The notes under the pieces are model-generated. The model worked only from the letters and a program-made list of their open reading frames with translations. It was not told the origin of the DNA and searched no databases. A DNA stretch of 64,000 nt from positions 19,220,001 to 19,284,000 of the forward strand of contig OZ059894.1 of assembly GCA_964057225.1 (NCBI GenBank). Reading direction: 5' to 3'. Shown piece after piece: positions 32,819 to 64,000 of this stretch. Both the position numbers and the translations under genes were made by a program. The number at the start of each line of letters is the position of its first letter. Position 1 is the stretch's first letter. Origin of the DNA: Auanema rhodensis. Taxonomy: Eukaryota > Animalia > Nematoda.

Positions 32819-32930
32819 ATCTGATAACACAGATCGACGCAGCTTAAAAATCCGCATCGAATGCACTATACTACATCTGATAACACAGATCGACGCAGCT
32901 TAAAAATCCGCATCGAATGATATATACTAC
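32819..32930 (+). repeat. 56-bp tandem duplication inside one satellite monomer (407-bp monomer)
   Basis: atctgataac...ctatactac occurs at 32819-32874 and again at 32875-32930, with cac changed to ata in the second copy. The ggatataagt landmark spacing from 32761 to 33168 is 407 = 351+56. Confidence 0.95.
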
Positions 32931-38900: not shown

Positions 38901-39849
38901 GAGAAACGCTTAATACAAAAATTAGTTATGATCGTTTGAAAAATGATGCATTAGTGTATGTTGAGTTTCCATGTACACTCAACATTGCTTCCAAAAACAT
39001 TTTGACAAAAATTTTTTCGAAAAATTTCAAAATAAATTAGCAAAAAGTAGATGTTTTTAGAATCCATTTTTCAAGGCAAAGACGATGGACAATGTTATTC
39101 AACGAAAAAATTAATTCTTCAGGGTGAAAATCGAGGATATAAGTGTGAACTTATATCAGTTGATATCTCGGTGCATTTTTAAGCTAGCGCAAATCTGATA
39201 ACACAGATCGACGCAGCTTAAAAATCCGCATCGAATGCACTATACTACATTGAGAAACGCTTAATACAAAAATTAGTTATGATCGTTTGAAAAATGATGC
39301 ATTAGTGTATGTTGAGTTTCCATGTACACTCAACATTGCTTCCAAAAACATTTTGACAAAAATTTTTTCGAAAAATTTCAAAATAATTTAGCAAAAAGTA
39401 GATGTTTTTAGATTGCTTTTTTCAAGGCAAAGACGATGGACAATGTTATTCAACGAAAAAAGTAATTCTTGAGGGTGAAAATCGAGGATATAAGTGTGAA
39501 CTTATATCAGTTGATATCTCGGTGCATTTTTAAGCTAGCGCAAATCTGATAACACAGATCGACGCAACTTAAAAATCCGCATCGAATGCACTATACTACA
39601 TTGAGAAACGCTTAATACAAAAATTAGTTATGATCGTTTGAAAAATGATGCATTAGTGTATGTTGAGTTTCCATGTACACTCAACATTGCTTCCAAAAAC
39701 ATTTTGACAAAAATTTTTTCGAAAAATTTCAAAATAAATTAGCAAAAAGTAGATGTTTTTAGATTCCATTTTTCAAGGCAAAGACGATGGACAATGTTAT
39801 TCAACGAAAAAAGTAATTCTTGAGGGTGAAAATCGAGGATATAAGTGTG

Positions 39850-45300: not shown

Positions 45301-48300
45301 CATTGCTTCCAAAAACATTTTGACAAAAATTTTTTCGAAAAATTTCAAAATAATTTAGCAAAAAGTAGATGTTTTTAGATTCCTTTTTTCAAGGCAAAGA
45401 CGATGGACAATGTTATTCAACGAAAAAATTAATTCTTCAGGGTGAAAATCGAGGATATAAGTGTGAACTTATATCAGTTGATATCTCGGTGCATTTTTAA
45501 GCTAGCGCAAATCTGATAACACAGATCGACGCAGCTTAAAAATCCGCATCGAATGCACTATACTACATTGAGAAACGCTTAATACAAAAATTAGTTATGA
45601 TCGTTTGAAAAATGATGCATTAGTGTATGTTGAGTTTCCATATACACTCAACATTGCTTCCAAAAACATTTTGACAAAAATTTTTTCGAAAAATTTCAAG
45701 ATAAATTAGCAAAAAGTAGATGTTTTTAGATTCCTTTTTTCAAGGCAAAGACGATGGACAATGTTATTCAACGAAAAAATTAATTTTTCAGGGTGAAAAT
45801 CGAGGATATAAGTGTGAACTTATATCAGTTGATATCTCGGTGCATTTTTAAGCTAGCGCAAATCTGATAACACAGATCGACGCAGCTTAAAAATCCGCAT
45901 CGAATGCACTATACTACATTGAGAAACGCTTAATACAAAAATTAGTTATGATCGTTTGAAAAATGATGCATTAGTGTATGTTGAGTTTCCATGTACACTC
46001 AACATTGCTTCCAAAAACATTTTGACAAAAATTTTTTCGAAAAATTTCAAGATAAATTAGCAAAAAGTAGATGTTTTTAGATTCCTTTTTTCAAGGCAAA
46101 GACGATGGACAATGTTAATCAACGAAAAAATTAATTCTTCAGGGTGAAAATCGAGGATATAAGTGTGAACTTATATCAGTTGATATCTCGGTGCATTTTT
46201 AAGCTAGCGCAAATCTGATAACACAGATCGACGCAGCTTAAAAATCCGCAACGAATGCACTATACTACATTGAGAAACGCTTAATACAAAAATTAGTTAT
46301 GATCGTTTGAAAAATGATGCATTAGTGTATGTTGAGTTTCCATGTACACTCAACATTGCTTCCAAAAACATTTTGACAAAAATTTTTTCGAGAAATTTCA
46401 AAATAATTTAGCAAAAAGTAGATGTTTTTCGATTGCTTTTTTCAAGGCAAAGACGATGGACAATGTTATTCAACGAAAAAATTAATTCTTGAGGGTGAAA
46501 ATCGAGGATATAAGTGTGAACTTATATCAGTTGATATCTCGGTGCATTTTTAAGCTAGCGCAAATCTGATAACACAGATCGACGCAGCTTAAAACTCCGC
46601 ATCGAATGCACTATACTACATTGAGAAACGCTTAATACAAAAATTAGTTATGATCGTTTGAAAAATGATGCATTAGTGTATGTTGAGTTTCCATGTACAC
46701 TCAACATTGCTTCCAAAAACATTTTGACAAAAATTTTTTCGAAAAATTTCAAAATAATTTAGCAAAAAGTAGATGTTTTTAGATTCCTTTTTTCAAGGCA
46801 AAGACGATGGACAATGTTATTCAACGAAAAAATTAATTCTTCAGGGTGAAAATCGAGGATATAAGTGTGAACTTATATCAGTTGATATCTCGGTGCATTT
46901 TTAAGCTAGCGCAAATCTGATAACACAGATCGACGCAGCTTAAAACTCCGCATCGAATGCACTATACTACATTGAGAAACGCTTAATACAAAAATTAGTT
47001 ATGATCGTTTGAAAAATGATGCATTAGTGTATGTTGAGTTTCCATGTACACTCAACATTGCTTCCAAAAACATTTTGACAAAAATTTTTTCGAAAAATTT
47101 CAAAATAATTTAGCAAAAAGTAGATGTTTTTAGATTCCTTTTTTCAAGGCAAAGACGATGGACAATGTTATTCAACGAAAAAATTAATTCTTCAGGGTGA
47201 AAATCGAGGATATAAGTGTGAACTTATATCAGTTGATATCTCGGTGCATTTTTAAGCTAGCGCAAATCTGATAACACAGATCGACGCAGCTTAAAAATCC
47301 GCATCGAATGCACTATACTACATTGAGAAACGCTTAATACAAAAATTAGTTATGATCGTTTGAAAAATGATGCATTAGTGTATGTTGAGTTTCCATATAC
47401 ACTCAACATTGCTTCCAAAAACATTTTGACAAAAATTTTTTCGAAAAATTTCAAAATAATTTAGCAAAAAGTAGATGTTTTTAGATTCCTTTTTTCAAGG
47501 CAAAGACGATGGACAATGTTATTCAACGAAAAAATTAATTCTTCAGGGTGGAAATCGAGGATATAAGTGTGAACTTATATCAGTTGATATCTCGGTGCAT
47601 TTTTAAGCTAGCGCAAATCTGATAACACAGATCGACGCAGCTTAAAACTCCGCATCGAATGCACTATACTACATTGAGAAACGCTTAATACAAAAATTAG
47701 TTATGATCGTTTGAAAAATGATGCATTAGTGTATGTTGAGTTTCCATGTACACTCAACATTGCTTCCAAAAACATTTTGACAAAAATTTTTTCGAAAAAT
47801 TTCAAAATAATTTAGCAAAAAGTAGATGTTTTTAGATTGCTTTTTTCAAGGCAAAGACGATGGACAATGTTATTCAACGAAAAAAGTAATTCTTGAGGGT
47901 GAAAATCGAGGATATAAGTGTGAACTTATATCAGTTGATATCTCGGTGCATTTTTAAGCTAGCGCAAATCTGATAACACAGATCGACGCAGCTTAAAAAT
48001 CCGCATCGAATGCACTATACTACATTGAGAAACGCTTAATACAAAAATTAGTTATGATCGTTTGAAAAATGATGCATTAGTGTATGTTGAGTTTCCATAT
48101 ACACTCAACATTGCTTCCAAAAACATTTTGACAAAAATTTTTTCGAAAAATTTCAAAATAATTTAGCAAAAAGTAGATGTTTTTAGATTCCTTTTTTCAA
48201 GGCAAAGACGATGGACAATGTTATTCAACGAAAAAATTAATTCTTCAGGGTGAAAATCGAGGATATAAGTGTGAACTTATATCAGTTGATATCTCGGTGC

Positions 48301-51300
48301 ATTTTTAAGCTAGCGCAAATCTGATAACACAGATCGACGCATCTTAAAACTCCGCATCGAATGCACTATACTACATTGAGAAACGCTTAATACAAAAATT
48401 AGTTATGATCGTTTGAAAAATTATGCATTAGTGTATGTTGAGTTTCCATGTACACTCAACATTGCTTCCAAAAACATTTTGACAAAAATTTTTTCGAAAA
48501 ATTTCAAAATAATTTAGCAAAAAGTAGATGTTTTTAGATTGCTTTTTTCAAGGCAAAGACGATGGACAATGTTATTCAACGAAAAAAGTAATTCTTGAGG
48601 GTGAAAATCGAGGATATAAGTGTGAACTTATATCAGTTGATATCTCGGTGCATTTTTAAGCTAGCGCAAATCTGATAACACAGATCGACGCAGCTTAAAA
48701 ATCCGCATCGAATGCACTATACTACATTGAGAAACGTTTAATACAAAAATTAGTTATGATCGTTTGAAAAATGATGCATTAGTGTATGTTGAGTTTCCAT
48801 ATACACTCAACATTGCTTCCAAAAACATTTTGACAAAAATTTTTTCGAAAAATTTCAAAATAATTTAGCAAAAAGTAGATGTTTTTAGATTCCTTTTTTC
48901 AAGGCAAAGACGATGGACAATGTTATTCAACGAAAAAATTAATTCTTCAGGGTGAAAATCGAGGATATAAGTGTGAACTTATATCAGTTGATATCTCGGT
49001 GCATTTTTAAGCTAGCGCAAATCTGATAACACAGATCGACGCAGCTTAAAAATCCGCATCGAATGCACTATACTACATTGAGAAACGCTTAATACAAAAA
49101 TTAGTTATGATCGTTTGAAAAATGATGCATTAGTGTATGTTGAGTTTCCATGTACACTCAACATTGCTTCCAAAAACATTTTGACAAAAATTTTTTCGAA
49201 AAATTTCAAGATAAATTAGCAAAAAGTAGATGTTTTTAGATTCCTTTTCTCAAGGCAAAGACGATGGACAATGTTATTCAACGAAAAAATTAATTTTTCA
49301 GGGTGAAAATCGAGGATATACGTGTGAACTTATATCAGTTGATATCTCGGTGCATTTTTAAGCTAGCGCAAATCTGATAACACAGATCGACGCAGCTTAA
49401 AAATCCGCATCGAATGCACTATACTACATTGAGAAACGCTTAATACAAAAATTAGTTATGATCGTTTGAAAAATGATGCATTAGTGTATGTTGAGTTTCC
49501 ATGTACACTCAACATTGCTTCCAAAAACATTTTGACAAAAATTTTTTCGAAAAATTTCAAGATAAATTAGCAGAAAGTAGATGTTTTTAGATTCCTTTTT
49601 TCAAGGCAAAGACGATGGACAATGTTATTCAACGAAAAAATTAATTTTTCAGGGTGAAAATCTAGGATATAAGTGTGAACTTATATCAGTTGATATCTCG
49701 GTGCATTTTTAAGCTAGCGCAAATCTGATAACACAGATCGACGCAGCTTAAAAATCCGCATCGAATGCACTATACTACATTGAGAAACGCTCAATACAAA
49801 AATTAGTTATGATCGTTTGAAAAATGATCCATTAGTGTATGTTGAGTTTCCATGTACACTCAACATTGCTTCCAAAAACATTTTGACAAAAATTTTTTCG
49901 AAAAATTTCAAGATAAATTAGCAAAAAGTAGATGTTTTTAGATTCCTTTTCTCAAGGCAAAGACGATGGACAATGTTATTCAACGAAAAAATTAATTTTT
50001 CAGGGTGAAAATCGAGGATATACGTGTGAACTTATATCAGTTGATATCTCGGTGCATTTTTAAGCTAGCGCAAATCTGATAACACAGATCGACGCAGCTT
50101 AAAAATCCGCATCGAATGCACTATACTACATTGAGAAACGCTCAATACAAAAATTAGTTATGATCGTTTGAAAAATGATCCATTAGTGTATGTTGAGTTT
50201 CCATGTACACTCAACATTGCTTCCAAAAACATTTTGACAAAAATTTTTTCGAAAAATTTCAAAATAATTTAGCAAAAAGTAGATGTTTTTAGATTGCTTT
50301 TTTCAAGGCAAAGACGATGGACAATGTTATTCAACGAAAAAATTAATTCTTGAGGGTGAAAATCGAGGATATAAGTGTGAACTTATATCAGTTGATATCT
50401 CGGTGCATTTTTAAGCTAGCGCAAATCTGATAACACAGATCGACGCAGCTTAAAAATCCGCATCGAATGCACTATACTACATTGAGAAACGCTTAATACA
50501 AAAATTAGTTATGATCGTTTGAAAAATGATGCATTAGTGTATGTTGAGTTTCCATATACACTCAACATTGCTTCCAAAAACATTTTGACAAAAATTTTTT
50601 CGAAAAATTTCAAAATAATTTAGCAAAAAGTAGATGTTTTTAGATTCCTTTTTTCAAGGCAAAGACGATGGACAATGTTATTCAACGAAAAAATTAATTC
50701 TTCAGGGTGAAAATCAAGGATATAAGTGTGAACTTATATCAGTTGATATCTCGGTGCATTTTTAAGCTAGCGCAAATCTGATAACACAGATCGACGCAGC
50801 TTAAAAATCCGCATCGAATGCACTATACTACATTGAGAAACGCTTAATACAAAAATTAGTTATGATCGTTTGAAAAATGATGCATTAGTGTATGTTGAGT
50901 TTCCATGTACACTCAACATTGCTTCCAAAAACATTTTGACAAAAATTTTTTCGAAAAATTTCAAGATAAATTAGCAAAAAGTAGATGTTTTTAGATTCCT
51001 TTTTTCAAGGCAAAGACGATGGACAATGTTATTCAACGAAAAAATTAATTCTTCAGGGTGAAAATCGAGGATATAAGTGTGAACTTATATCAGTTGATAT
51101 CTCGGTGCATTTTTAAGCTAGCGCAAATCTGATAACACAGATCGACGCAGCTTAAAAATCCGCATCGAATGCACTATACTACATTGAGAAACGCTCAATA
51201 CAAAAATTAGTTATGATCGTTTGAAAAATGATCCATTAGTGTATGTTGAGTTTCCATGTACACTCAACATTGCTTCCAAAAACATTTTGACAAAAATTTT

Positions 51301-54199
51301 TTCGAAAAATTTCAAAATAATTTAGCAAAAAGTAGATGTTTTTAGATTGCTTTTTTCAAGGCAAAGACGATGGACAATGTTATTCAACGAAAAAATTAAT
51401 TCTTGAGGGTGAAAATCGAGGATATAAGTGTGAACTTATATCAGTTGATATCTCGGTGCATTTTTAAGCTAGCGCAAATCTGATAACACAGATCGACGCA
51501 ACTTAAAAATCCGCATCGAATGCACTATACTACATTGAGAAACGCTTAATACAAAAATTAGTTATGATCGTTTGAAAAATGATGCATTAGTGTATGTTGA
51601 GTTTCCATATACACTCAACATTGCTTCCAAAAACATTTTGACAAAAATTTTTTCGAAAAATTTCAAAATAATTTAGCAAAAAGTAGATGTTTTTAGATTC
51701 CTTTTTTCAAGGCAAAGACGATGGACAATGTTATTCAACGAAAAAATTAATTCTTCAGGGTGAAAATCGAGGATATAAGTGTGAACTTATATCAGTTGAT
51801 ATCTCGGTGCATTTTTAAGCTAGCGCAAATCTGATAACACAGATCGACGCAGCTTAAAAATCCGCATCGAATGCACTATACTACATTGAGAAACGCTCAA
51901 TACAAAAATTAGTTATGATCGTTTGAAAAATGATCCATTAGTGTATGTTGAGTTTCCATGTACACTCAACATTGCTTCCAAAAACATTTTGACAAAAATT
52001 TTTTCGAAAAATTTCAAAATAATTTAGCAAAAAGTAGATGTTTTTAGATTGCTTTTTTCAAGGCAAAGACGATGGACAATGTTATTCAACGAAAAAATTA
52101 ATTCTTGAGGGTGAAAATCGAGGATATAAGTGTGAACTTATATCAGTTGATATCTCGGTGCATTTTTAAGCTAGCGCAAATCTGATAACACAGATCGACG
52201 CAACTTAAAAATCCGCATCGAATGCACTATACTACATTGAGAAACGCTTAATACAAAAATTAGTTATGATCGTTTGAAAAATGATGCATTAGTGTATGTT
52301 GAGTTTCCATGTACACTCAACATTGCTTCCAAAAACATTTTGACAAAACTTTTTTCGAAAAATTTCAAAATAAATTAGCAAAAAGTAGATGTTTTTAGAA
52401 TCCATTTTTCAAGGCAAAGACGATGGACAATGTTATTCAACGAAAAAATTAATTCTTCAGGGTGAAAATCGAGGATATAAGTGTGAACTTATATCAGTTG
52501 ATATCTCGGTGCATTTTTAAGCTAGCGCAAATCTGATAACACAGATCGACGCAGCTTAAAAATCCGCATCGAATGCACTATACTACATTGAGAAACGCTT
52601 AATACAAAAATTAGTTATGATCGTTTGAAAAATGATGCATTAGTGTATGTTGAGTTTCCATGTACACTCAACATTGCTTCCAAAAACATTTTGACAAAAC
52701 TTTTTTCGAAAAATTTCAAAATAAATTAGCAAAAAGTAGATGTTTTTAGAATCCATTTTTCAAGGCAAAGACGATGGACAATGTTATTCAACGAAAAAAT
52801 TAATTCTTCAGGGTGAAAATCAAGGATATAAGTGTGAACTTATATCAGTTGATATCTCGGTGCATTTTTAAGCTAGCGCAAATCTGATAACACAGATCGA
52901 CGCAGCTTAAAAATCCGCATCGAATGCACTATACTACATTGAGAAACGCTTAATACAAAAATTAGTTATGATCGTTTGAAAAATGATGCATTAGTGTATG
53001 TTGAGTTTCCATGTACACTCAACATTGCTTCCAAAAACATTTTGACAAAAATTTTTTCGAAAAATTTCAAGATAAATTAGCAAAAAGTAGATGTTTTTAG
53101 ATTCCTTTTTTCAAGGCAAAGACGATGGACAATGTTATTCAACGAAAAAATTAATTTTTCAGGGTGAAAATCGAGGATATAAGTGTGAACTTATATCAGT
53201 TGATATCTCGGTGCATTTTTAAGCTAGCGCAAATCTGATAACACAGATCGACGCAGCTTAAAAATCCGCATCGAATGCACTATACTACATTGAGAAACGC
53301 TCAATACAAAAATTAGTTATGATCGTTTGAAAAATGATCCATTAGTGTATGTTGAGTTTCCATGTACACTCAACATTGCTTCCAAAAACATTTTGACAAA
53401 AATTTTTTCGAAAAATTTCAAAATAATTTAGCAAAAAGTAGATGTTTTTAGATTGCTTTTTTCAAGGCAAAGACGATGGACAATGTTATTCAACGAAAAA
53501 ATTAATTCTTGAGGGTGAAAATCGAGGATATAAGTGTGAACTTATATCAGTTGATATCTCGGTGCATTTTTAAGCTAGCGCAAATCTGATAACACAGATC
53601 GACGCAACTTAAAAATCCGCATCGAATGCACTATACTACATTGAGAAACGCTTAATACAAAAATTAGTTATTATCGTTTGAAAAATGATGCATTAGTGTA
53701 TGTTGAGTTTCCATATACACTCAACATTGCTTCCAAAAACATTTTGACAAAAATTTTTTCGAAAAATTTCAAAATAATTTAGCAAAAAGTAGATGTTTTT
53801 AGATTCCTTTTTTCAAGGCAAAGACGATGGACAATGTTATTCAACGAAAAAATTAATTCTTCAGGGTGAAAATCGAGGATATAAGTGTGAACTTATATCA
53901 GTTGATATCTCGGTGCATTTTTAAGCTAGCGCAAATCTGATAACACAGATCGACGCAGCTTAAAAATCCGCATCGAATGCACTATACTACATTGAGAAAC
54001 GCTCAATACAAAAATTAGTTATGATCGTTTGAAAAATGATCCATTAGTGTATGTTGAGTTTCCATGTACACTCAACATTGCTTCCAAAAACATTTTGACA
54101 AAAATTTTTTCGAAAAATTTCAAAATAATTTAGCAAAAAGTAGATGTTTTTAGAATTCATTTTTCAAGGCAAAGATGATGGACAATGTTATTCAACGAA

Positions 54200-57100
54200 A
54201 AAATTAATTCTTCAGGGTGAAAATCAAGGATATAAGTGTGAACTTATATCAGTTGATATCTCGGTGCATTTTTAAGCTAGCGCAAATCTGATAACACAGA
54301 TCGACGCAGCTTAAAAATCCGCATCGAATGCACTATACTACATTGAGAAACGCTTAATACAAAAATTAGTTATGATCGTTTGAAAAATGATGCATTAGTG
54401 TATGTTGAGTTTCCATGTACACTCAACATTGCTTCCAAAAACATTTTGACAAAAATTTTTTCAAAAAATTTCAAGATAAATTAGCAAAAAGTAGATGTTT
54501 TTAGATTCCTTTTTTCAAGGCAAAGACGATGGACAATGTTATTCAACGAAAAAATTAATTTTTCAGGGTGAAAATCGAGGATATACGTGTGAACTTATAT
54601 CAGTTGATATCTCGGTGCATTTTTAAGCTAGCGCAAATCTGATAACACAGATCGACGCAGCTTAAAAATCCGCATCGAATGCACTATACTACATTGAGAA
54701 ACGCTTAATACAAAAATTAGTTATGATCGTTTGAAAAATGATGCATTAGTGTATGTTGAGTTTCCATGTACACTCAACATTGCTTCCAAAAACATTTTGA
54801 CAAAAATTTTTTCGAAAAATTTCAAGATAAATTAGCAAAAAGTAGATGTTTTTAGATTCCTTTTTTCAAGGCAAAGACGATGGACAATGTTATTCAACGA
54901 AAAAATTAATTTTTCAGGGTGAAAATCGAGGATATAAGTGTGAACTTATATCAGTTGATATCTCGGTGCATTTTTAAGCTAGCGCAAATCTGATAACACA
55001 GATCGACGCAGCTTAAAAATCCGCATCGAATGCACTATACTACATTGAGAAACGCTCAATACAAAAATTAGTTATGATCGTTTGAAAAATGATCCATTAG
55101 TGTATGTTGAGTTTCCATGTACACTCAACATTGCTTCCAAAAACATTTTGACAAAAATTTTTTCGAAAAATTTCGAAATAATTTAGCAAAAAGTAGATGT
55201 TTTTAGATTGCTTTTTTCAAGGCAAAGACGATGGACAATGTTATTCAACGAAAAAATTAATTCTTGAGGGTGAAAATCGAGGATATAAGTGTGAACTTAT
55301 ATCAGTTGATATCTCGGTGCATTTTTAAGCTAGCGCAAATCTGATAACACAGATCGACGCAACTTAAAAATCCGCATCGAATGCACTATACTACATTGAG
55401 AAACGCTTAATACAAAAATTAGTTATGATCGTTTGAAAAATGATGCATTAGTGTATGTTGAGTTTCCATGTACACTCAACATTGCTTCCAAAAACATTTT
55501 GACAAAAATTTTTTCGAAAAATTTCAAAATAATTTAGCAAAAAGTAGATGTTTTTAGATTTCTTTTTTCAAGGCAAAGACGATGGACAATGTTATTCAAC
55601 GAAAAAATTAATTCTTCAGGGTGAAAATCGAGGATATAAGTGTGAACTTATATCAGTTGATATCTCGGTGCATTTTTAAGCTAGCGCAAATCTGATAACA
55701 CAGATCGACGCAGCTTAAAAATCCGCATCGAATGCACTATACTACATTGAGAAACGCTTAATACAAAAATTAGTTATGATCGTTTGAAAAATGATGCATT
55801 AGTGTATGTTGAGTTTCCATGTACACTCAACATTGCTTCCAAAAACATTTTGACAAAAATTTTTTCGAAAAATTTCAAAATAATTTAGCAAAAAGTAGAT
55901 GTTTTTAGATTCCTTTTTTCAAGGCAAAGACGATGGACAATGTTATTCAACGAAAAAATTAATTCTTCAGGGTGAAAATCGAGGATATAAGTGTGAACTT
56001 ATATCAGTTGATATCTCGGTGCATTTTTAAGCTAGCGCAAATCTGATAACACAGATCGACGCAGCTTAAAAATCCGCATCGAATGCACTATACTACATTG
56101 AGAAACGCTTAATACAAAAATTAGTTATGATCGTTTGAAAAATGATGCATTAGTGTATGTTGAGTTTCCATGTACACTCAACATTGCTTCCAAAAACATT
56201 TTGACAAAAATTTTTTCGAAAAATTTCAAAATAATTTAGCAAAAAGTAGATGTTTTTAGATTTCTTTTTTCAAGGCAAAGACGATGGACAATGTTATTCA
56301 ACGAAAAAATTAATTCTTCAGGGTGAAAATCGAGGATATAAGTGTGAACTTATATCAGTTGATATCTCGGTGCATTTTTAAGCTAGCGCAAATCTGATAA
56401 CACAGATCGACGCAACTTAAAAATCCGCATCGAATGCACTATACTACATTGAGAAACGCTTAATACAAAAAATAGTTATGATCGTTTGAAAAATGATGCA
56501 TTAGTGTATGTTGAGTTTCCATGTACACTCAACATTGCTTCCAAAAACATTTTGACAAAACTTTTTTCGAAAAATTTCAAAATAATTTAGCAAAAAGTAG
56601 ATGTTTTTAGATTCCTTTTTTCAAGGCAAAGACGATGGACAATGTTATTCAACGAAAAAATTAATTCTTCAGGGTGAAAATCGAGGATATAAGTGTGAAC
56701 TTATATCAGTTGATATCTCGGTGCATTTTTAAGCTAGCGCAAATCTGATAACACAGATCGACGCAGCTTAAAAATCCGCATCGAATGCACTATACTACAT
56801 TGAGAAACGCTTAATACAAAAATTAGTTATGATCGTTTGAAAAATGATGCATTAGTGTATGTTGAGTTTCCATGTACACTCAACATTGCTTCCAAAAACA
56901 TTTTGACAAAAATTTTTTCGAAAAATTTCAAAATAATTTAGCAAAAAGTAGATGTTTTTAGATTCCTTTTTTCAAGGCAAAGACGATGGACAATGTTATT
57001 CAACGAAAAAATTAATTCTTCAGGGTGAAAATCGAGGATATAAGTGTGAACTTATATCAGTTGATATCTCGGTGCATTTTTAAGCTAGCGCAAATCTGAT

Positions 57101-60003
57101 AACACAGATCGACGCAACTTAAAAATCCGCATCGAATGCACTATACTACATTGAGAAACGCTTAATACAAAAAATAGTTATGATCGTTTGAAAAATGATG
57201 CATTAGTGTATGTTGAGTTTCCATGTACACTCAACATTGCTTCCAAAAACATTTTGACAAAAATTTTTTCGAAAAATTTCAAGATAAATTAGCAAAAAGT
57301 AGATGTTTTTAGATTCCTTTTTTCAAGGCAAAGACGATGGACATGTTATTCAACGAAAAAATTAATTTTTCAGGGTGAAAATCGAGGATATAAGTGTGAA
57401 CTTATATCAGTTGATATCTCGGTGCATTTTTAAGCTAGCGCAAATCTGATAACACAGATCGACGCAGCTTAAAAATCCGCATCGAATGCACTATACTACA
57501 TTGAGAAACGCTCAATACAAAAATTAGTTATGATCGTTTGAAAAATGATCCATTAGTGTATGTTGAGTTTCCATGTACACTCAACATTGCTTCCAAAAAC
57601 ATTTTGACAAAAATTTTTTCGAAAAATTTCAAAATAATTTAGCAAAAAGTAGATGTTTTTAGATTGCTTTTTTCAAGGCAAAGACGATGGACAATGTTAT
57701 TCAACGAAAAAATTAATTCTTGAGGGTGAAAATCGAGGATATAAGTGTGAACTTATATCAGTTGATATCTCGGTGCATTTTTAAGCTAGCGCAAATCTGA
57801 TAACACAGATCGACGCAACTTAAAAATCCGCATCGAATGCACTATACTACATTGAGAAACGCTTAATACAAAAATTAGTTATGATCGTTTGAAAAATGAT
57901 GCATTAGTGTATGTTGAGTTTCCATGTACACTCAACATTGCTTCCAAAAACATTTTGACAAAAATTTTTTCGAAAAATTTCAAAATAATTTAGCAAAAAG
58001 TAGATGTTTTTAGATTTCTTTTTTCAAGGCAAAGACGATGGACAATGTTATTCAACGAAAAAATTAATTCTTCAGGGTGAAAATCGAGGATATAAGTGTG
58101 AACTTATATCAGTTGATATCTCGGTGCATTTTTAAGCTAGCGCAAATCTGATAACACAGATCGACGCAGCTTAAAAATCCGCATCGAATGCACTATACTA
58201 CATTGAGAAACGCTTAATACAAAAATTAGTTATGATCGTTTGAAAAATGATGCATTAGTGTATGTTGAGTTTCCATGTACACTCAACATTGCTTCCAAAA
58301 ACATTTTGACAAAACTTTTTTCGAAAAATTTCAAAATAAATTAGCAAAAAGTAGATGTTTTTAGAATCCATTTTTCAAGGCAAAGACGATGGACAATGTT
58401 ATTCAACGAAAAAATTAATTCTTCAGGGTGAAAATCAAGGATATAAGTGTGAACTTATATCAGTTGATATCTCGGTGCATTTTTAAGCTAGCGCAAATCT
58501 GATAACACAGATCGACGCAGCTTAAAAATCCGCATCGAATGCACTATACTACATTGAGAAACGCTTAATACAAAAATTAGTTATGATCGTTTGAAAAATG
58601 ATGCATTAGTGTATGTTGAGTTTCCATGTACACTCAACATTGCTTCCAAAAACATTTTGACAAAAATTTTTTCAAAAAATTTCAAGATAAATTAGCAAAA
58701 AGTAGATGTTTTTAGATTCCTTTTTTCAAGGCAAAGACGATGGACAATGTTATTCAACGAAAAAATTAATTTTTCAGGGTGAAAATCGAGGATATACGTG
58801 TGAACTTATATCAGTTGATATCTCGGTGCATTTTTAAGCTAGCGCAAATCTGATAACACAGATCGACGCAGCTTAAAAATCCGCATCGAATGCACTATAC
58901 TACATTGAGAAACGCTTAATACAAAAATTAGTTATGATCGTTTGAAAAATGATGCATTAGTGTATGTTGAGTTTCCATGTACACTCAACATTGCTTCCAA
59001 AAACATTTTGACAAAAATTTTTTCGAAAAATTTCAAGATAAATTAGCAAAAAGTAGATGTTTTTAGATTCCTTTTTTCAAGGCAAAGACGATGGACAATG
59101 TTATTCAACGAAAAAATTAATTTTTCAGGGTGAAAATCGAGGATATAAGTGTGAACTTATATCAGTTGATATCTCGGTGCATTTTTAAGCTAGCGCAAAT
59201 CTGATAACACAGATCGACGCAGCTTAAAAATCCGCATCGAATGCACTATACTACATTGAGAAACGCTCAATACAAAAATTAGTTATGATCGTTTGAAAAA
59301 TGATCCATTAGTGTATGTTGAGTTTCCATGTACACTCAACATTGCTTCCAAAAACATTTTGACAAAAATTTTTTCGAAAAATTTCGAAATAATTTAGCAA
59401 AAAGTAGATGTTTTTAGATTGCTTTTTTCAAGGCAAAGACGATGGACAATGTTATTCAACGAAAAAATTAATTCTTGAGGGTGAAAATCGAGGATATAAG
59501 TGTGAACTTATATCAGTTGATATCTCGGTGCATTTTTAAGCTAGCGCAAATCTGATAACACAGATCGACGCAACTTAAAAATCCGCATCGAATGCACTAT
59601 ACTACATTGAGAAACGCTTAATACAAAAATTAGTTATGATCGTTTGAAAAATGATGCATTAGTGTATGTTGAGTTTCCATGTACACTCAACATTGCTTCC
59701 AAAAACATTTTGACAAAAATTTTTTCGAAAAATTTCAAAATAATTTAGCAAAAAGTAGATGTTTTTAGATTTCTTTTTTCAAGGCAAAGACGATGGACAA
59801 TGTTATTCAACGAAAAAATTAATTCTTCAGGGTGAAAATCGAGGATATAAGTGTGAACTTATATCAGTTGATATCTCGGTGCATTTTTAAGCTAGCGCAA
59901 ATCTGATAACACAGATCGACGCAGCTTAAAAATCCGCATCGAATGCACTATACTACATTGAGAAACGCTTAATACAAAAATTAGTTATGATCGTTTGAAA
60001 AAT
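54200..60003. repeat. Dispersed block duplication: ~54200-55792 repeated at ~58411-60003 (offset 4211 = 12x351-1)
   Basis: Rare variants share order and offset: aatcaagg 54226/58437, tcaaaaaatt 54463/58674, tatacgtg 54586/58797, tttcgaaata 55175/59386, gcaactt 55361/59572, gatttct 55561/59772. Confidence 0.85.
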
Positions 60004-60060
60004 TATTCTATTTTACTAGTCTACGACGTTAAATAAGAATTATATTTATTCGAAATGCTT
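60001..60060 (-). repeat. Right terminus of the DIRS element: right extension (~60001-60037) plus outer end of the right inverted terminal repeat (60038 onward; inner boundary not determinable)
   Basis: 60001-60054 is the exact reverse complement of 60432-60485. 60038-60060 (aattatatttattcgaaatgctt) is repeated directly at 60482-60504. Confidence 0.88.
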
Positions 60061-60431
60061 TATTTCGTAATAGGTCCTCACATAAAACAAACAAAAAAAA
60101 ATTCAAATTATCTCTCAGGTTCCCTTTCCCACGTTTCTTTGGGCGGGAAACAGTGAGAGTAAGCGATCGTCCTTATTCATTTCAGGTGTCCAAAAAAGGA
60201 AGAATAGAAAGGCAGCATAACAATAACAAAATAAAAGAACAATAGTAACAGAAGGAAAGGAAAGGCTGCGGATAGCAGGCAGCATGCTAACCTATCTCTT
60301 GCGGTCGTAGTTGGTGCGTTGTGCAGGCTTGAATCTGGAAAGTTATGATAAAGACATCGAAAGTGGGCGAGCTCGAGTGGAAGTCCTCAGGTTGGTTAGC
60401 GGGAGCGCAGTAGGGGTGGAGGTGGGAGATA

Positions 60432-60504
60432 TTCGAATAAATATAATTCTTATTTAACGTCGTAGACTAGTAAAATAGAATAATTATATTTATTCGAAAT
60501 GCTT
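60432..60504 (-). repeat. Internal complementary region (ICR) of the DIRS element
   Basis: Composite of a 54-bp perfect inverted copy of the right end and a 23-bp segment equal to the ITR start, overlapping by aatt (60482-60485). It lies 2 nt beyond the YR stop codon (60507-60509), the usual ICR position in DIRS1 elements. Confidence 0.92.
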
Positions 60505-60506
60505 CT

Positions 60507-61763
60507 TCAAAAAAGAATCTTGGACTGGAACGAGGTTCTTCGCTCATAGTGGGTGAAGAAGGTTTTTTCTGAAGCCCAGTTAGCCGCCTTGAGGATGTCG
60601 CCTATAGGTAGACCTTGCGCTAGTGCCTTCGAGGTCACAGCCGAGCGTGTTGAGTGAGCTTTGAAGGTAGTGGGTATGCCCGCGCTGTGCAGGGTCTTTC
60701 TAATCCAACCAGAAATGGTGGTGGGTTCCACTGCTGCTCCATTCTTTCTGTTAAGAAAGAGGCATCTTGTTCGGCGGAGTTCCATGGTTCGAGATAGGTA
60801 TTCATTTATGCAGTTAATAGGGCACAGGTTATTGCGTGTGGGGAAGTTCTCGAACTTCGCTTCATGCGGGGGTCCCTTAGATCTGTTTTTATTGCGTTTA
60901 TTTATGAAGAAAGTTAACCCTTCTGCGTCGATACGCATGTGATCTAGGGAGAAAACGGCCAATTCGCTCACCCTCTTTGGAGAGCATAGGGCCAATAGAG
61001 TGGCTAGCTTGTGAGTGAGAGACTCTAGGCTGAGTTGGACGTTGGGGCCCAGCCTATCAAGGAAGTCCAAGACTTCGGAGGGGTCCCAGGTGTCTACGTA
61101 CCTAGCCCCTGAAGGCTTCTCTCTGAACAAACCCCTCATGAGGCGGAGGAGCAGCACGTTCTCCTTTAGGGAGGGGGAGACCCCTAGGTGATCGGCCAAT
61201 GCGGATATCGCTACCTTGTGTATGCGTACTGTGGAGAAGGCCTTAGTTTGAGCGAGAAATGATAGATAGTTAGCAACCGTTACTGGGTTGGGAGTAAAAG
61301 GTATCTTCTGCTTATTGCAGTAAGCTTTCCAGTTCTTGAGAGCACAGCCGTACTGTTTGCGTGTTCCTGGGGCCCAGGATTCGTTTAGGAGTCTCTTAGT
61401 CTCTGCTGTTACTCCCTCAAAGGAGTTTGTTAAATCTTCCACGCTGCTAATTGGAAATTCGGCGACTGCAGGAGAGGATGTGGGTTTCCTTCCCGGTCGG
61501 ACAGCAGGTTCGGGTGTTGGAGCAGCAAGGGAGGCTCCTTGGATCTCTCTTGGAGTAGGGGAAACCACATTTGGCTCTTCCAGAATGGTGCTATCACTAT
61601 AGCCGACCTCTGGGAGCTGGCGAGCTTTCCTAAGGTCTTGTGCAGGAGGTGGAAAGGTGGAAATACGTAAAGTAATCCGTCTGGCAGCTGCTGCCAATTG
61701 AACAAGAGTGCGTTCACTCCTAATGCGGCGCAATCTGGAAAGAAGGAGTAGAAAAGGGCGCAT
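60507..61763 (-). CDS. DIRS tyrosine recombinase (lambda integrase superfamily)
   Basis: Catalytic set, numbered on the 422-aa track: R268 (KRVSEL), probable K296, H374-x-x-R377 (HSTRS), W400 and Y410 (FFTHY). An N-terminal core-binding-like region SWAPGTRKQY...W..YC and the CPI motif are present. The track start at 61775 is TTG; the first ATG is at 61763 and the frame opens after a stop at 61803-61805. The true start is uncertain. Confidence 0.94.
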   Translation of the reverse strand: MRPFLLLLSRLRRIRSERTLVQLAAAARRITLRISTFPPPAQDLRKARQLPEVGYSDSTILEEPNVVSPTPREIQGASLAAPTPEPAVRPGRKPTSSPAVAEFPISSVEDLTNSFEGVTAETKRLLNESWAPGTRKQYGCALKNWKAYCNKQKIPFTPNPVTVANYLSFLAQTKAFSTVRIHKVAISALADHLGVSPSLKENVLLLRLMRGLFREKPSGARYVDTWDPSEVLDFLDRLGPNVQLSLESLTHKLATLLALCSPKRVSELAVFSLDHMRIDAEGLTFFINKRNKNRSKGPPHEAKFENFPTRNNLCPINCINEYLSRTMELRRTRCLFLNRKNGAAVEPTTISGWIRKTLHSAGIPTTFKAHSTRSAVTSKALAQGLPIGDILKAANWASEKTFFTHYERRTSFQSKILF

Positions 61764-64000
61764 TTGGCGTTCCAAGTGGACGCGAACAGGTCTATTTTGG
61801 GTTCACCCCATTTGGAAAATATTGATCTAGTGATCTCCGGATGGAGCGACCAGTCTTCCTTCAAAATTCTGCCGCGGGACAGGCAGTCGGCAGCCGTATT
61901 GATTTTTCCCGCTATATGCGATGCTCTGATTCTGAGCTTACGGGTATCGGCAAATTGCCATAACTCCAGTGCTAATCTAGTGCCCTTCTGGGATTGACTC
62001 CCGCCCCTACGGTTGATGTAGGCAATGGCAGAAGTATTATCTAAGAGTAAGAGAACGTCGAGATTGAGCCAGGTCTTGCCGAACTCTGTTAGACCCTTCG
62101 TTGCTGCAATCAGCTCCAGCCAGTTTATATGGTAGTTAAAGCGTTCTGCCTCGGACCAAGATCCTGACAAGGTATTACCTTCCCACGAAGCGCCAAAACC
62201 CTCCAGGGAGGCATCTGAGGTAATGGAGTATCGGGGAGAAAAGGGCGTGAGCGAGGATACTTCTGATAGACGGGGAACGTCCTTGGTTCGAAGATCCTCC
62301 AGGATCTTTCTTAACGATCGATCTATTCTTAGAATTTGAGGGAAGGCATTGGGATCATTTACGTTCGTAATTCCTTTAAGCCGTAGGTGGAAGTGCAGTT
62401 CACGGTTTCTGAAGGAGAGGTTAGGTGCTACCAGAGACGCAAAGTTCAATTTTCCCATTAGCGAGGCTAATGCTCTTATACTCAGCTCTGATTGAGCTGT
62501 TAAACGAGTGAGAGACTCGAGCAAACCCTTTTTCTTGGCCTTTGGGAGAGACCAGCTCATCGATCTTGAATTCAGCTGAATACCAAGAAATTCTATTTCT
62601 TGTGTGGGTATCATAATTGATTTATCCCAGTTTATCGTAAAACCCGCGCGATCAAAAGTAATTAGAATCTCTGTTAGTTGGGACCTGAGACAATCAGGAT
62701 CCTCCGAGATGAACAGCCAGTCATCTAAGTAGTTGATGAGATTGATCCCTTTACCCCGAAAATGGGATACCAGAACACGCATTAGCTTATGGAATATGTA
62801 GGGGGCTGAGCTCAGCCCAAAAGGGAGTGCTCTAAATAGGAAAGTGCGCCCCTCTGCTGTGAAAGCTAGGAAGGGTTGATCCTTCGGATCGATACTAATC
62901 GCGTGGTAGGCTGAATGAAAATCGATTTTGATCATGAAATTATCCTGTCGTAGGAGCGACGGGATGTCCCGAAGGGATTCTAGCTTGAACTTGGGTACTC
63001 GGAGAAAAGTGTTCAGGCGCTTTAAATTGAGGATGAAACGGGCCGTGCCGTCCGCCTTGGGAACGTGGAAGGTCGGGGATATGAAAACCTTCTCCCTCGG
63101 GGCGGCCTCTCGAATGGCGCCAGTGTACAGCAGTTCCTGGATATCCGACCTGGGTTGCTCCGGCAAGGTAGAGCAGATGGGTGGCAGCGATAAAGGTGGA
63201 GGTGTGCGGGCAAAGGGGAGACTATAGCCCTGAACCGCGTTAAGGATCTCCTTGTCCCTGGAGATGGACGCCCAAAAGGTTGTGGTGGAGGATACCCGGC
63301 ATGCGAAAGGAAAAGTGACTAACCTCTTTCTCTGGTTAGTAGCGAACGTTGAGAAGGTAGCTTGTCTCTTGGGGGCTGAGCGTGGCCGTTGGGCATCATT
63401 CCTGCGAGGAGTTGTTCTGGAGCTTCTGGACAGTTCGGAGTACGACGATAGTTCTGCTCTGAGCTTCTTGCCAAACAGTTCGGGTGCCGAATCCTCTGGA
63501 GCGTTGTCTACCGGGATCACGGTTCCATAGATGGGGGACTTCTTGAAGCTAGGCATGGCTCGGTAGGGTTGAGAGATCTTCATCTTGGTTAGAGCACACT
63601 CTCGCAAGTTGGTGCAGTGGGTCTTGATGTTAGCGCTGAGGAAGCGCTCCACTATGGCAAAGTATGCCTCCTGTTTTGTTGACAGACGAGAGTCCCTATC
63701 TATCCTGCCCAGCTTGCGAATTATCTTGATGTTAGAAAGAACGATTAGATCATTCTCGTATGCCGTGCGTATCTCAGCTTCGGACAGACGGATAGTGGGC
63801 TTGATGTTATTGTCCACGTGAGTAGTGTAGCGGTCGTCCAAGACCGGTAGTCGAGCGAACGGTGAGTCGATATTTGGGAGTTCCGAGATGAGCTCAGCTC
63901 TCTCGGTCGAGGACATGAGCAGTCCCGAGGCGAGTCTCTCGAAATCAGCAGTCTCGGAGGAAGATAGGCGAACGAGTGGCCTAGATCTGGGTCCGTGTGC
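61430..64000 (-). CDS. DIRS polyprotein: Gag-like C-terminal region + reverse transcriptase + RNase H + methyltransferase-like domain (5'-partial; at least 828 aa from ATG at 63916)
   Basis: RT motifs: FHVPKADG..RFILNLKRLN, KIDFHSAYH, LPFGLSSAP, YLDD (62720-62731) and FLG. RNase H (~62227-61874): SDAS..GFG, HINWLELIA, DNTSA, HIAGKINTAADCLSR. MT-like domain (~61855-61430): DW, IDLFAS, YVFPPF, APFW...WF. Manual translation of 63917-64000 finds no stop (AHGPRSRPLVRLSSSETADFERLASGLL-M), so the true start is probably outside the window. Confidence 0.95.
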   Translation of the reverse strand, partial: AHGPRSRPLVRLSSSETADFERLASGLLMSSTERAELISELPNIDSPFARLPVLDDRYTTHVDNNIKPTIRLSEAEIRTAYENDLIVLSNIKIIRKLGRIDRDSRLSTKQEAYFAIVERFLSANIKTHCTNLRECALTKMKISQPYRAMPSFKKSPIYGTVIPVDNAPEDSAPELFGKKLRAELSSYSELSRSSRTTPRRNDAQRPRSAPKRQATFSTFATNQRKRLVTFPFACRVSSTTTFWASISRDKEILNAVQGYSLPFARTPPPLSLPPICSTLPEQPRSDIQELLYTGAIREAAPREKVFISPTFHVPKADGTARFILNLKRLNTFLRVPKFKLESLRDIPSLLRQDNFMIKIDFHSAYHAISIDPKDQPFLAFTAEGRTFLFRALPFGLSSAPYIFHKLMRVLVSHFRGKGINLINYLDDWLFISEDPDCLRSQLTEILITFDRAGFTINWDKSIMIPTQEIEFLGIQLNSRSMSWSLPKAKKKGLLESLTRLTAQSELSIRALASLMGKLNFASLVAPNLSFRNRELHFHLRLKGITNVNDPNAFPQILRIDRSLRKILEDLRTKDVPRLSEVSSLTPFSPRYSITSDASLEGFGASWEGNTLSGSWSEAERFNYHINWLELIAATKGLTEFGKTWLNLDVLLLLDNTSAIAYINRRGGSQSQKGTRLALELWQFADTRKLRIRASHIAGKINTAADCLSRGRILKEDWSLHPEITRSIFSKWGEPKIDLFASTWNAKCALFYSFFPDCAALGVNALLFNWQQLPDGLLYVFPPFHLLHKTLGKLASSQRSAIVIAPFWKSQMWFPLLQERSKEPPLLLQHPNLLSDREGNPHPLLQSPNFQLAAWKI

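What the first reader, a model, noticed from the sequence alone, without database searches (positions are those of the whole stretch)
59900..64000. Intact DIRS tyrosine-recombinase retrotransposon joined precisely to a homogeneous satellite array: candidate satellite/centromere-targeting family
Seen: 60 kb of near-identical 351-bp monomers ends at a single base with no degenerate transition, directly at the terminus of an element with two stop-free ORFs, complete RT/RNase H/YR catalytic motifs and mismatch-free terminus-ICR complementarity. Established: DIRS elements integrate a circular intermediate through a YR without a conventional target-site duplication, and Dictyostelium DIRS-1 clusters at centromeres. 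The best-known satellite-invading retroelements are instead Ty3/Ty1 LTR or non-LTR types. Inference: this is a very young, probably active DIRS family that may target this satellite at a fixed monomer position. One insertion cannot show targeting.
Basis: partly seen in the sequence, partly recalled or inferred. Interest (0 to 1): 0.85.

Follow-up and report, generated by a model that had tools for sequence, protein, structure and literature searches.

The report
Jumping gene confined to germline-only satellite
A young jumping gene of the DIRS type in the roundworm Auanema rhodense sits only inside one 351-letter repeat that the worm discards from its body cells, and lands again and again at the same few letters of it. 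The repeat is not a centromere.

Summary
A 351-bp satellite (170.8 copies, 97% alike) ends at window 60003. A 4,427-bp DIRS1-type tyrosine-recombinase retrotransposon follows (60004 to 64430, minus strand, running past the window), and the satellite resumes in register with no base gained or lost.

The element has 147-nt perfect ITRs and an ICR that is 100% complementary to both termini. It carries a 940-aa gag-RT-RNase H-MT ORF and an overlapping 418-aa recombinase ORF.

The genome is the Auanema rhodense germline assembly. The satellite makes up at least 23.5% of it and must lie in DNA eliminated from somatic cells. The centromere reading is therefore not supported.

All 12 copies of the family lie in this satellite, at four positions that each follow AAT. 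One position was hit at least four separate times: the elements there differ by 0-13 of 4,427 bases (0-1 among the three chromosome-1 copies), while their flanks differ by about 2%. A second family (65% identical) uses the same position, and a similar motif in an unrelated 199-bp satellite.

One caveat limits the targeting claim. The satellite holds about 58% of all AAAAAT sites in the genome, so simple sequence preference plus weak selection explains much of the bias. Activity is unproven, because no RNA was seen.

The scan's first readers had already flagged other copies of these DIRS elements elsewhere in this genome.

The parts
1..60003 (+). 351-bp satellite array. It makes up at least 23.5% of the genome. 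Inferred to be the second autosomal-terminal, germline-restricted repeat (AT-2) of A. rhodense.
   Evidence: TRF: period 351, 170.8 copies, 97%. A 27-mer of the monomer hits 121,062 times genome-wide. It is not the AT-1, XR or XT FISH-probe repeat. The preprint describes two autosome-specific terminal repeats.
60001..60003 (+). AAT triplet of the target, identical to the last three bases of the element's far end. This is the presumed 3-bp crossover core.
   Evidence: All four used sites end in AAT (AAG in the C6 copies). The ICR complementarity extends over this triplet. The 3-bp junction model is described in PMC3266345.
60004..64000 (-). DIRS1-type retrotransposon, family 1. The full element is 4,427 bp and ends at window-equivalent 64430, outside the window (seen in L002).
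60004..60038 (-). 35-nt extension of the 3' terminus (right extension), absent from the other ITR and complementary to the ICR.
   Evidence: I1 starts at 60039; I2 covers 60001-60054.
60039..60185 (-). 3' inverted terminal repeat, 147 nt, 100% complementary to 64284-64430.
   Evidence: the repeat finder I1.
60432..60504 (-). Internal complementary region. One half complements the 3' terminus and the other half the 5' terminus, so it spells the joined-ends (circle) junction.
   Evidence: the repeat finder I2 (54 nt, 100%) and I3 (25 nt, 96%).
60507..61763 (-). ORF2, tyrosine recombinase, 418 aa from the first ATG. Motifs: KRVSEL (60960-60977), AHSTRS (60642-60659), FTHY (60546-60557).
   Evidence: Pfam PF00589 4.5e-8, 33.5 bits against a cut-off of 27.1.
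61430..64000 (-). ORF1, 940 aa, gag-like N-terminus fused to RT, RNase H and an MT-like domain. Its ATG is at window-equivalent 64252. It overlaps ORF2 by 334 nt.
62573..63061 (-). Reverse transcriptase domain (YLDD at 62720-62731).
   Evidence: Pfam RVT_1 8.9e-22.
61874..62218 (-). RNase H motifs (SDASLEGFG, NWLELIA, LLLDNTSAIAY, HIAGKINTAADCLSR).
   Evidence: Read directly from the translation. Homologues covering this region carry PF17917. Pfam itself did not call the domain here.
61547..61861 (-). Putative methyltransferase-like domain, typical of the DIRS order.
   Evidence: Weak Pfam Dam match, E = 0.0022-0.0084, below the cut-off. Several homologues carry PF05869.

Best explanation
This is one copy of a young, low-copy DIRS1-type tyrosine-recombinase retrotransposon family in the germline genome of the nematode Auanema rhodense.

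Inferred mechanism, from the DIRS-1 model: an RNA is reverse-transcribed, and the ICR serves as the template that restores and joins the two termini. The element's tyrosine recombinase then exchanges strands between the AAT at the joined ends and an AAT in the chromosome. This inserts the element conservatively, with no target-site duplication.

Shown here: insertion is not random among AAT sites. The family uses a few sites that follow an A-run in the 351-bp satellite, above all ...ATGATCGTTTGAAAAAT|GATGC.

The satellite is a huge germline-only repeat that is thrown away from somatic cells at about the 12-cell stage. It holds most of the genome's A5T sites. Sequence preference therefore puts most new copies there, and weak selection on eliminated DNA lets intact copies persist. 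Array dynamics then duplicate some copies along with their flanking monomers.

The satellite is not a centromere.
For: Anatomy. The element is 4,427 bp with 147-nt perfect ITRs, a 35-nt terminal extension, and an ICR complementary to both ends. It has RT, recombinase and MT-like hits and two overlapping ORFs. The insertion is precise and in register, with no duplication.

Distribution. There are exactly 12 copies with both termini, all inside the 351-bp satellite. The satellite is 23.5% of the genome. If 7-8 independent events fell at random, the chance that all land in it is about 1e-5.

Independent insertions. The copies at C1:19.280 and C1:19.394 have identical elements (0 differences in 4,427 bases). 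Their flanks differ at 37 of 2,106 positions, starting 8 bp from the junction, which is as much as random array segments differ. The same holds for the C1:19.096 and C4 copies. Empty sites identical over +/-200 bp lie 3-4 kb upstream.

Site clustering. Four of 8 events fall at one of 27 AAT sites: p = 0.003.

Second family. A family 65% identical in DNA (55% in recombinase protein) has 5 of its 11 copies at the same site. Two more are in a non-homologous 199-bp satellite that shares ATGATCG-N3/4-GAAAAA with that site.

Selection on the element. Between subfamilies there are 12 synonymous and 10 non-synonymous changes (binomial p = 0.003 against 75% non-synonymous), so the lineages diverged under selection for function. 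Changes mirrored in both ITRs of the C5 copy, and poly-A length that co-varies between the two ITRs, indicate copying through the replication cycle.

Organism and fate of the satellite. The assembly size of 180.9 Mb matches, and the published AT-1 FISH probe hits 138,553 times at a 176-bp period. The preprint reports that the terminal autosomal repeat blocks are eliminated from the soma.
Against: The satellite holds about 58% of all AAAAAT hexamers in the genome. Under a plain A5T preference, all 7 A5T-type events landing in it has p of about 0.02. Use of 3 of the monomer's 8 A5T sites is not significantly uneven (p = 0.09-0.19).

Site C (GCAAT|GTTGA) does not fit the A-run motif.

Five of the 12 copies are probably array duplications rather than new insertions.

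No RNA evidence was found: three RNA-labelled runs held none of the element's words.

Gene conversion among copies could make them look younger than they are.

That this satellite is the paper's AT-2, and is eliminated, is inferred from its size and distribution. It was not read from the paper's tables, which were not available.

Long-read support for the junction could not be checked.
Confidence: 0.75

Rival explanations
1. Retention bias only. The element inserts at any AAT in the genome. Copies in gene-rich retained DNA are purged, while copies in eliminated repeat blocks are invisible to somatic selection, so only those survive.
For: The preprint itself argues that eliminated regions are under weak selective surveillance. 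Eliminated DNA is more than 90% tandem repeat, so any survivor there would sit in a satellite. A relative in N. brasiliensis sits in ordinary gene-flanked DNA.
Against: Within eliminated DNA (61% of the genome), the chance that all 7-8 events fall in this one satellite is about 5e-4 to 1e-3. None is in the 24-Mb AT-1 repeat. Four of 8 events fall at one of 27 AAT sites, p = 0.003. A second family shares that exact site and a 13-nt motif in an unrelated satellite.
Confidence: 0.12
2. No repeated transposition. One or two old insertions were spread within and between arrays by unequal crossing-over and segmental duplication of the satellite.
For: Some copy pairs clearly arose this way. C1:19.394 and C1:19.400 are 5,831 bp apart, which equals 4,427 + 4 x 351, and their flanks are identical for 345 to 1,038 bp. 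The C1:5.518/5.526 pair has an identical left flank. The three C6 copies share a rare G at the junction.
Against: There are four different monomer positions and two orientations. Identical elements have flanks that differ by 1.8% starting 4-8 bp from the junction. On the one informative substitution (plus two ITR poly-A length states), the C4 site-A copy groups with the C1:5.5 Mb site-B copies (8 differences against 13), not with the C1 site-A copies.
Confidence: 0.05
3. Targeting by chromatin or a bound protein rather than by DNA sequence. The recombinase or gag is tethered to heterochromatin, or to a satellite-binding factor, on the germline-restricted blocks, and the AAT core only fixes the exact base.
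For: At least four DIRS families by recombinase similarity. For two of them copies were shown here to lie in eliminated-type satellites, and three of the four had already been flagged there by first readers. Used sites do not resemble the element's own junction more than unused AAT sites do. Tethered targeting is known for Ty1, Ty3, Ty5 and chromoviruses (own knowledge).
Against: The same nucleotide is reused in different arrays and chromosomes. The ATGATCG-N3/4-GAAAAA motif is shared by two unrelated satellites, which points to DNA recognition. No chromodomain or other reader domain was found in the gag-like part.
Confidence: 0.1
4. One reading: a centromere-targeting retroelement sitting in centromeric satellite.
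For: Dictyostelium DIRS-1 and nototheniid fish DIRS1 accumulate at centromeric heterochromatin (abstracts seen). Long homogeneous satellite arrays are typical of regional centromeres.
Against: The host is a rhabditid nematode, a group with holocentric chromosomes (own knowledge, not tested for Auanema). [quoted passage not shown]
Confidence: 0.03

Closest known systems
DIRS1-like retrotransposons (Dictyostelium DIRS-1 and the animal DIRS1-like elements surveyed by Piednoel et al. 2011, PMC3266345)
   Same: The architecture matches: ITRs, a one-sided terminal extension, and an ICR complementary to both ends. It has gag, RT, RNase H, an MT-like domain and a tyrosine recombinase, with a long ORF overlap. 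In element orientation it begins with ATT and ends next to ATT, the commonest triplet in that survey. Insertion leaves no target-site duplication.
   Different: The host is a rhabditid nematode, a group in which the 2011 and 2014 surveys found no well-conserved DIRS1-like element. gag is fused in frame to pol. Every copy lies in one satellite at four fixed positions, whereas DIRS-1 is known for inserting into other DIRS-1 copies at centromeres.
Pat1-like elements of nematodes (Panagrellus, C. briggsae, Pristionchus)
   Same: They belong to the same DIRS order, have the same domain set including the MT-like domain, and occur in nematode hosts.
   Different: Pat1-like elements have split direct repeats (A1-B1...A2-B2) and a zinc finger in gag. 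This element has inverted terminal repeats plus an ICR and no zinc-finger motif.
Site-specific retrotransposons of repeated DNA: R1/R2 in rDNA, TRAS/SART in telomeric repeats, microsatellite-specific non-LTR elements, centromere-satellite Ty3 elements (own knowledge)
   Same: Repeated independent insertion at the same nucleotide of a tandem repeat, in a fixed orientation. The family is low in copy number, intact and young. The niche is a 'safe haven' where insertions cost little.
   Different: Those elements use endonuclease- or integrase-based integration. This one uses a tyrosine recombinase with a 3-bp core. Its specificity is looser (four sites), and its target is a satellite that exists only in the germline.
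CR1-like LINE families at two fixed positions of the 176-bp eliminated satellite of the same genome
   Same: The same genome and the same kind of niche: a germline-restricted terminal satellite with fixed insertion positions.
   Different: A different element class (a non-LTR LINE, not a recombinase retroelement) and a different satellite (AT-1, not the 351-bp repeat). I confirmed only that the 176-bp repeat is the published AT-1. I did not check the LINE claim.

Membership tests
DIRS1-like (Dirs1 superfamily, DIRS order) | Reverse transcriptase with the YxDD motif | tested here: met
   PF00078 8.9e-22, 78 bits against a cut-off of 29.6. YLDD lies at 62720-62731.
DIRS1-like (Dirs1 superfamily, DIRS order) | RNase H domain after RT | tested here: inconclusive
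   The motifs DAS..G.G, E, DN and H..N..AD.LSR can be read in the translation, and homologues carry PF17917. Pfam did not call the domain in this protein.
DIRS1-like (Dirs1 superfamily, DIRS order) | Putative methyltransferase domain (separates DIRS from Ngaro and VIPER) | tested here: inconclusive
   PF05869 Dam at E = 0.0022-0.0084, 16-18 bits, below the cut-off of 28.1. Homologues carry PF05869.
DIRS1-like (Dirs1 superfamily, DIRS order) | Tyrosine recombinase in place of integrase | tested here: met
   PF00589 4.5e-8, 33.5 bits against a cut-off of 27.1. R, HxxR and Y motifs are present. There was no match to solved structures by sequence.
DIRS1-like (Dirs1 superfamily, DIRS order) | Inverted terminal repeats plus an internal complementary region matching both termini | tested here: met
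   ITRs 147 nt at 100%. ICR arms 54 nt at 100% and 25 nt at 96%.
DIRS1-like (Dirs1 superfamily, DIRS order) | Insertion without target-site duplication, at a 3-bp sequence shared with the junction | tested here: met
   The satellite resumes in register. AAT lies at the left flank and at the element's far end in 9 of 12 copies, and AAG in the three C6 copies.
Pat1-like (PAT) | Split direct repeats A1-B1...A2-B2 | tested here: not met
   Only one short direct repeat of 26 nt was found, and it is part of the ITR/ICR system. The termini are inverted.
Pat1-like (PAT) | Zinc finger in gag | tested here: not met
   No CCHC-type motif in the first 250 or so residues of ORF1. No Pfam hit.
Site-specific (target-restricted) retrotransposon | Independent insertions at the same nucleotide and orientation, and none elsewhere | tested here: met
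   12 of 12 copies are in the satellite. Site A was hit at least 4 times with unrelated flanks. Specificity is relaxed: four sites are used.
Centromere-targeting retroelement | The target repeat is the functional centromere (CENP-A bound) | not testable with these tools
   No ChIP data were available. The host is a nematode, and the repeat is inferred to be eliminated from the soma, which argues against it.

The most novel reading that the evidence does not exclude
Several DIRS1-like lineages in A. rhodense may have evolved true sequence-specific integration into germline-restricted satellites. The recombinase, or a partner, would read a site of about 13 nt (ATGATCG-N3/4-GAAAAA[T]) that exists almost only in repeats discarded from the soma. 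Programmed DNA elimination would then have created a dedicated niche in which intact recombinase retroelements persist at no somatic cost.
Probability: 0.4. Interest if true: 0.8.

Novelty: new variant of a known kind. Interest (0 to 1): 0.64.

Why it matters
Recombinase (DIRS) retroelements are the least understood retrotransposons, and almost nothing is known about how they choose targets. Here a small, intact family gives a clean natural record of conservative integration: at least seven events, four sites, and a shared motif between two families.

The host discards 61% of its germline genome. The record therefore bears on an open question in the DNA-elimination field. Is eliminated DNA merely a place where repeats pile up, or is it a niche that mobile elements actively exploit?

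The site and the recombinase are now defined well enough to test directly.

The finding also shows that DIRS1-type architecture exists in rhabditid nematodes (Auanema and Nippostrongylus), contrary to the earlier surveys.

Tried and rejected
- **Wider flanks.** I did not try to get those letters another way. Flank analysis rests on the 1.0-1.5 kb already held, plus junction patterns that I specified myself.
- **Homology between satellite and element** (homing by homology). Only chance matches of 10-17 nt were found. Rejected.
- **Used sites resemble the element's own joined-ends junction.** They rank mid to low among the 27 AAT sites. Rejected.
- **The 199-bp and 351-bp satellites are homologous.** No significant alignment. 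Rejected, so the shared motif is not common descent.
- **This satellite is the published AT-1, XR or XT repeat.** No probe match. Rejected. AT-1 is the 176-bp repeat.
- **Expression.** No RNA-labelled run held the element, and only one 155-nt contig lay on the satellite. This is not evidence of silence.
- **Junction support from reads.** Only Logan contigs were available, and those listed break inside the terminal repeats. Inconclusive.
- **Recombinase against solved structures by sequence.** Nothing meaningful.
- **Pfam on the gag-like part.** Nothing.
- **One synonymous/non-synonymous comparison** (C5 against C6) was discarded, because indels shifted my coordinates.

Full report
**1. What is in the window**

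Tandem Repeats Finder reports a single array from 1 to 60003: period 351, 170.8 copies, 97% matches, no indels. The array ends at ...gtttgaaaaat. From 60004 the sequence is unrelated to it (blastn of monomer against element finds only chance words).

The window cuts the element at 64000. The window is G000:C1:19220001-19284000, and locus L002 shows the rest. The element ends at window-equivalent 64430, and the very next bases are gatgcatta..., which continue the monomer exactly where it was broken. The insertion is therefore 4,427 bp with no base duplicated or lost.

**2. Anatomy of the element (minus strand)**

- The repeat finder gives 147-nt ITRs that are 100% complementary (60039-60185 and 64284-64430).
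- There is a 35-nt extension at one end only (60004-60038).
- The internal complementary region lies at 60432-60504. Its two halves complement the two termini, 54 nt at 100% and 25 nt at 96%. The first of these runs on over the AAT triplet at the junction.
- ORF1 is 940 aa (64252 to 61430). It has a gag-like N-terminus without a zinc finger, then RT (Pfam RVT_1 8.9e-22, YLDD), readable RNase H motifs, and a weak Dam-like methyltransferase match.
- ORF2 is 418 aa (61763 to 60507) and overlaps ORF1 by 334 nt. It is a tyrosine recombinase (PF00589 4.5e-8, above its cut-off; R, HxxR and Y motifs).

This is the textbook DIRS1-like layout described by Piednoel et al. (PMC3266345), including the commonest ATT/AAT junction triplet. 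It is not the split-direct-repeat, zinc-finger layout of nematode Pat1 (PMC4157794).

**3. The organism and the satellite**

Protein relatives are nematode sequences at only 34-37% identity.

- The assembly size, 180,911,798 bases, equals the 180.9 Mb of the new A. rhodense germline assembly (preprint 10.64898/2026.08.27.747507).
- The paper's FISH probe for the eliminated autosomal repeat AT-1 hits G000 138,553 times with a 176-bp period, starting at the very end of contig C1.

So the genome is A. rhodense.

The 351-bp repeat is not AT-1, XR-1, XT-1 or XT-2. A 27-mer across its monomer boundary hits 121,062 times. That is about 42.5 Mb, or 23.5% of the genome, on many contigs.

The paper says the following:

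- Retained DNA is about 60 Mb with under 10% repeats.

A 42-Mb autosomal repeat can only lie in the eliminated part, and it is most likely AT-2. This is an inference, because the supplementary tables were not available. Rhabditid nematodes are holocentric (own knowledge), and somatic cells divide without this repeat, so the centromere reading is not supported.

**4. All copies and their sites**

Searches with both termini find exactly 12 copies. Every one is flanked on both sides by the 351-bp satellite. Four positions are used, and all follow AAT:

| Site | Sequence at the junction | Copies |
|---|---|---|
| A | gtttgaaaaAAT\|gatgc | C1:19.096, 19.280, 19.394, 19.400; C4:19.25 |
| B (satellite in the other orientation) | cgaaaaaAAT\|ttttg | C1:5.518, 5.526; C6:1.481, 2.001, 2.014 |
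| C | ggaagcAAT\|gttga | C5:18.07 |
| D | cttaaaaAAT\|ccgca | C3:4.558 |

**5. How many independent events**

The elements differ by 0-40 of about 4,427 positions.

Probable duplications:

- C1:19.394 and 19.400 lie 5,831 bp apart, which is 4,427 + 4 x 351. Their flanks are identical for 345 and 1,038 bp, so this is a tandem duplication.
- C1:5.518/5.526 is likewise a duplication.
- The three C6 copies share a rare G at the junction and are probably one event.

Independent insertions:

- C1:19.280 and C1:19.394 have identical elements. Their flanks differ at 37 of 2,106 positions, beginning 8 bp from the junction.
- That divergence matches random array segments, whose median is 23 per 1,404.
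- C1:19.096 and C4:19.25 behave the same way.
- Empty sites identical to this copy's flanks over +/-200 bp lie 3-4 kb upstream, as expected for insertion into the local array.

I count at least 7-8 independent insertions, four of them at site A.

**6. Statistics**

- All events in a repeat that is 23.5% of the genome: about 1e-5.
- All events in this repeat, counting eliminated DNA only: about 5e-4 to 1e-3.
- Four of eight events at one of the 27 AAT sites of the monomer: p = 0.003.
- Three of the four sites are AAAAAT. The monomer has eight such sites, and under an A5T rule the site usage is not significantly uneven (p = 0.09-0.19).
- The genome has 1,662,597 AAAAAT sites, and about 58% of them are in this satellite. 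A plain A5T preference would put all seven A5T-type events there with p of about 0.02.

Much of the 'targeting' is therefore what a short sequence preference would give in a genome where this repeat dominates.

**7. A second family points to longer recognition**

A family 65% identical in DNA (55% in recombinase protein) has 11 copies.

- Five of them, all on C3, sit at site A of the same satellite, one base to the left (gtttgaaaaa|TAGAA...).
- Two sit in an unrelated 199-bp satellite at C4:13.6 Mb.
- The two satellites are not homologous, yet the two targets share ATGATCG, then 3 or 4 bases, then GAAAAA, directly before the junction. By my rough estimate the chance of this is about 0.004.
- Eight of the 11 copies follow AAAAA.

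By recombinase similarity there are at least four DIRS families, all with open recombinase frames. First readers had flagged DIRS copies in satellites at several of these places. I did not check those.

**8. Youth and function**

- Nine of the 11 contiguous copies have both ORFs open.
- One has a 2-bp deletion in ORF1.
- One has a frameshift in the recombinase.
- The C3 copy is split by two insertions of about 17 kb.

Between the most divergent subfamilies there are 12 synonymous and 10 non-synonymous changes (p = 0.003 against neutral expectation). The lineages therefore diverged under selection for coding function.

The C5 copy carries a substitution mirrored in both ITRs, and poly-A length co-varies between the two ITRs across copies. 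This fits regeneration of the ends through the replication cycle.

Contigs from three independent DNA studies, under three organism labels, hold the element body as a single contig of 3.8-3.9 kb with 3-5 differences. No RNA-labelled run held it, so activity is plausible but unproven.

**9. Mechanism**

- Shown here: conservative insertion at AAT, a fixed orientation per site, an ICR that spells the joined ends, and repeated use of a few sites.
- Established elsewhere: the ICR is essential for DIRS-1 retrotransposition, and the cDNA is mostly linear and single-stranded (PMC7192593). The 3-bp junction recombination model is from PMC3266345.
- Inferred: the recombinase or a partner prefers A-run sites, perhaps with an upstream ATGATCG. 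Residence in eliminated DNA removes any somatic cost.

**10. Comparison and novelty**

The element meets the tested structural criteria of DIRS1-like elements and fails those of Pat1. Its RNase H and methyltransferase domains are supported only by motifs and by homologues.

Surveys of 2011 and 2014 found no well-conserved DIRS1-like element in rhabditid nematodes. The closest named relative, in Nippostrongylus brasiliensis, also has perfect 152-nt ITRs and an ICR, and sits in ordinary gene-flanked DNA.

I found no paper that mentions DIRS in Auanema, or a recombinase retroelement specific for a satellite. The preprint says only that half of the eliminated protein-coding genes look TE-derived.

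Verdict: a new variant of a known kind. It is a DIRS1-like family restricted to a germline-only satellite, with a small set of preferred integration sites. The scan's first readers had already flagged other copies of these families, and a follow-up had described LINEs at fixed sites in the other terminal satellite.

Noticed in passing
L013, L014, L012, L025 (G000:C3:4558492-4596808): The C3 copy of the element is split into three pieces by two insertions of about 17 kb. The two insertions have identical termini (AGTAGAGAGCC...), the same orientation, and 6-bp target duplications (GCCGTA and ATGGAG). Two hits within 884 bp of a 4.4-kb element, while the surrounding satellite is untouched, suggests that this element avoids the satellite or prefers DIRS sequence.
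   Followed up: partly
L027-L030; G000:C3:4.41-4.95 Mb, C4:13.63-13.65 Mb, C6:4.72 and 15.90 Mb, C1:3.14 Mb: A second DIRS family (65% DNA identity) has 11 copies. Two pairs are inverted (C4:13628528 minus with 13647345 plus; C6:4718757 minus with 4728054 plus), which looks like palindromic duplication. Two C3 copies are 4,787 bp apart, which may mean adjacent monomers.
   Followed up: partly
G000:C1:12.97-13.20 Mb, C3:5.29, C4:7.89 and 12.01-12.06, C6:4.25, C8:25.85 Mb: There are two further DIRS recombinase families (52-53% aa identity), all with open frames of 300-438 aa. Their flanks were not examined.
   Followed up: no
window 60072 and 60093-60094, and their mirror positions 64397 and 64368-64369 in L002/L008: In the C5 copy a substitution and a poly-A shortening occur at mirror positions of both ITRs. 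Poly-A length co-varies between the two ITRs across copies. This suggests that both ends are rebuilt from one template in each replication cycle.
   Followed up: partly
L031:4475-9440 (Nippostrongylus brasiliensis CP130734.1): The closest named relative (34% aa) is a full element with 152-nt perfect ITRs, an ICR and two overlapping ORFs, sitting in non-satellite DNA. DIRS1-type architecture therefore exists in Strongylida too, contrary to the 2011 and 2014 surveys.
   Followed up: partly
window 59584-59738: One 155-nt contig (depth 4) from an RNA-labelled run lies on the satellite. This is either satellite transcription or DNA carry-over.
   Followed up: no
L005/L006 flanks (G000:C1:5.52 Mb): The satellite on the left arm of C1 is a variant with a 349-bp period and its own diagnostic bases (cgttaaaat and cgggaaaat at site B). 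It is about 6% diverged from the C6 arrays, so the arrays are chromosome-arm specific subfamilies.
   Followed up: partly
G000:C1:134 onward: The contig starts directly in the 176-bp AT-1 repeat. The 351-bp repeat begins near 0.907 Mb. The left terminal block is therefore AT-1 followed by the 351-bp repeat.
   Followed up: no
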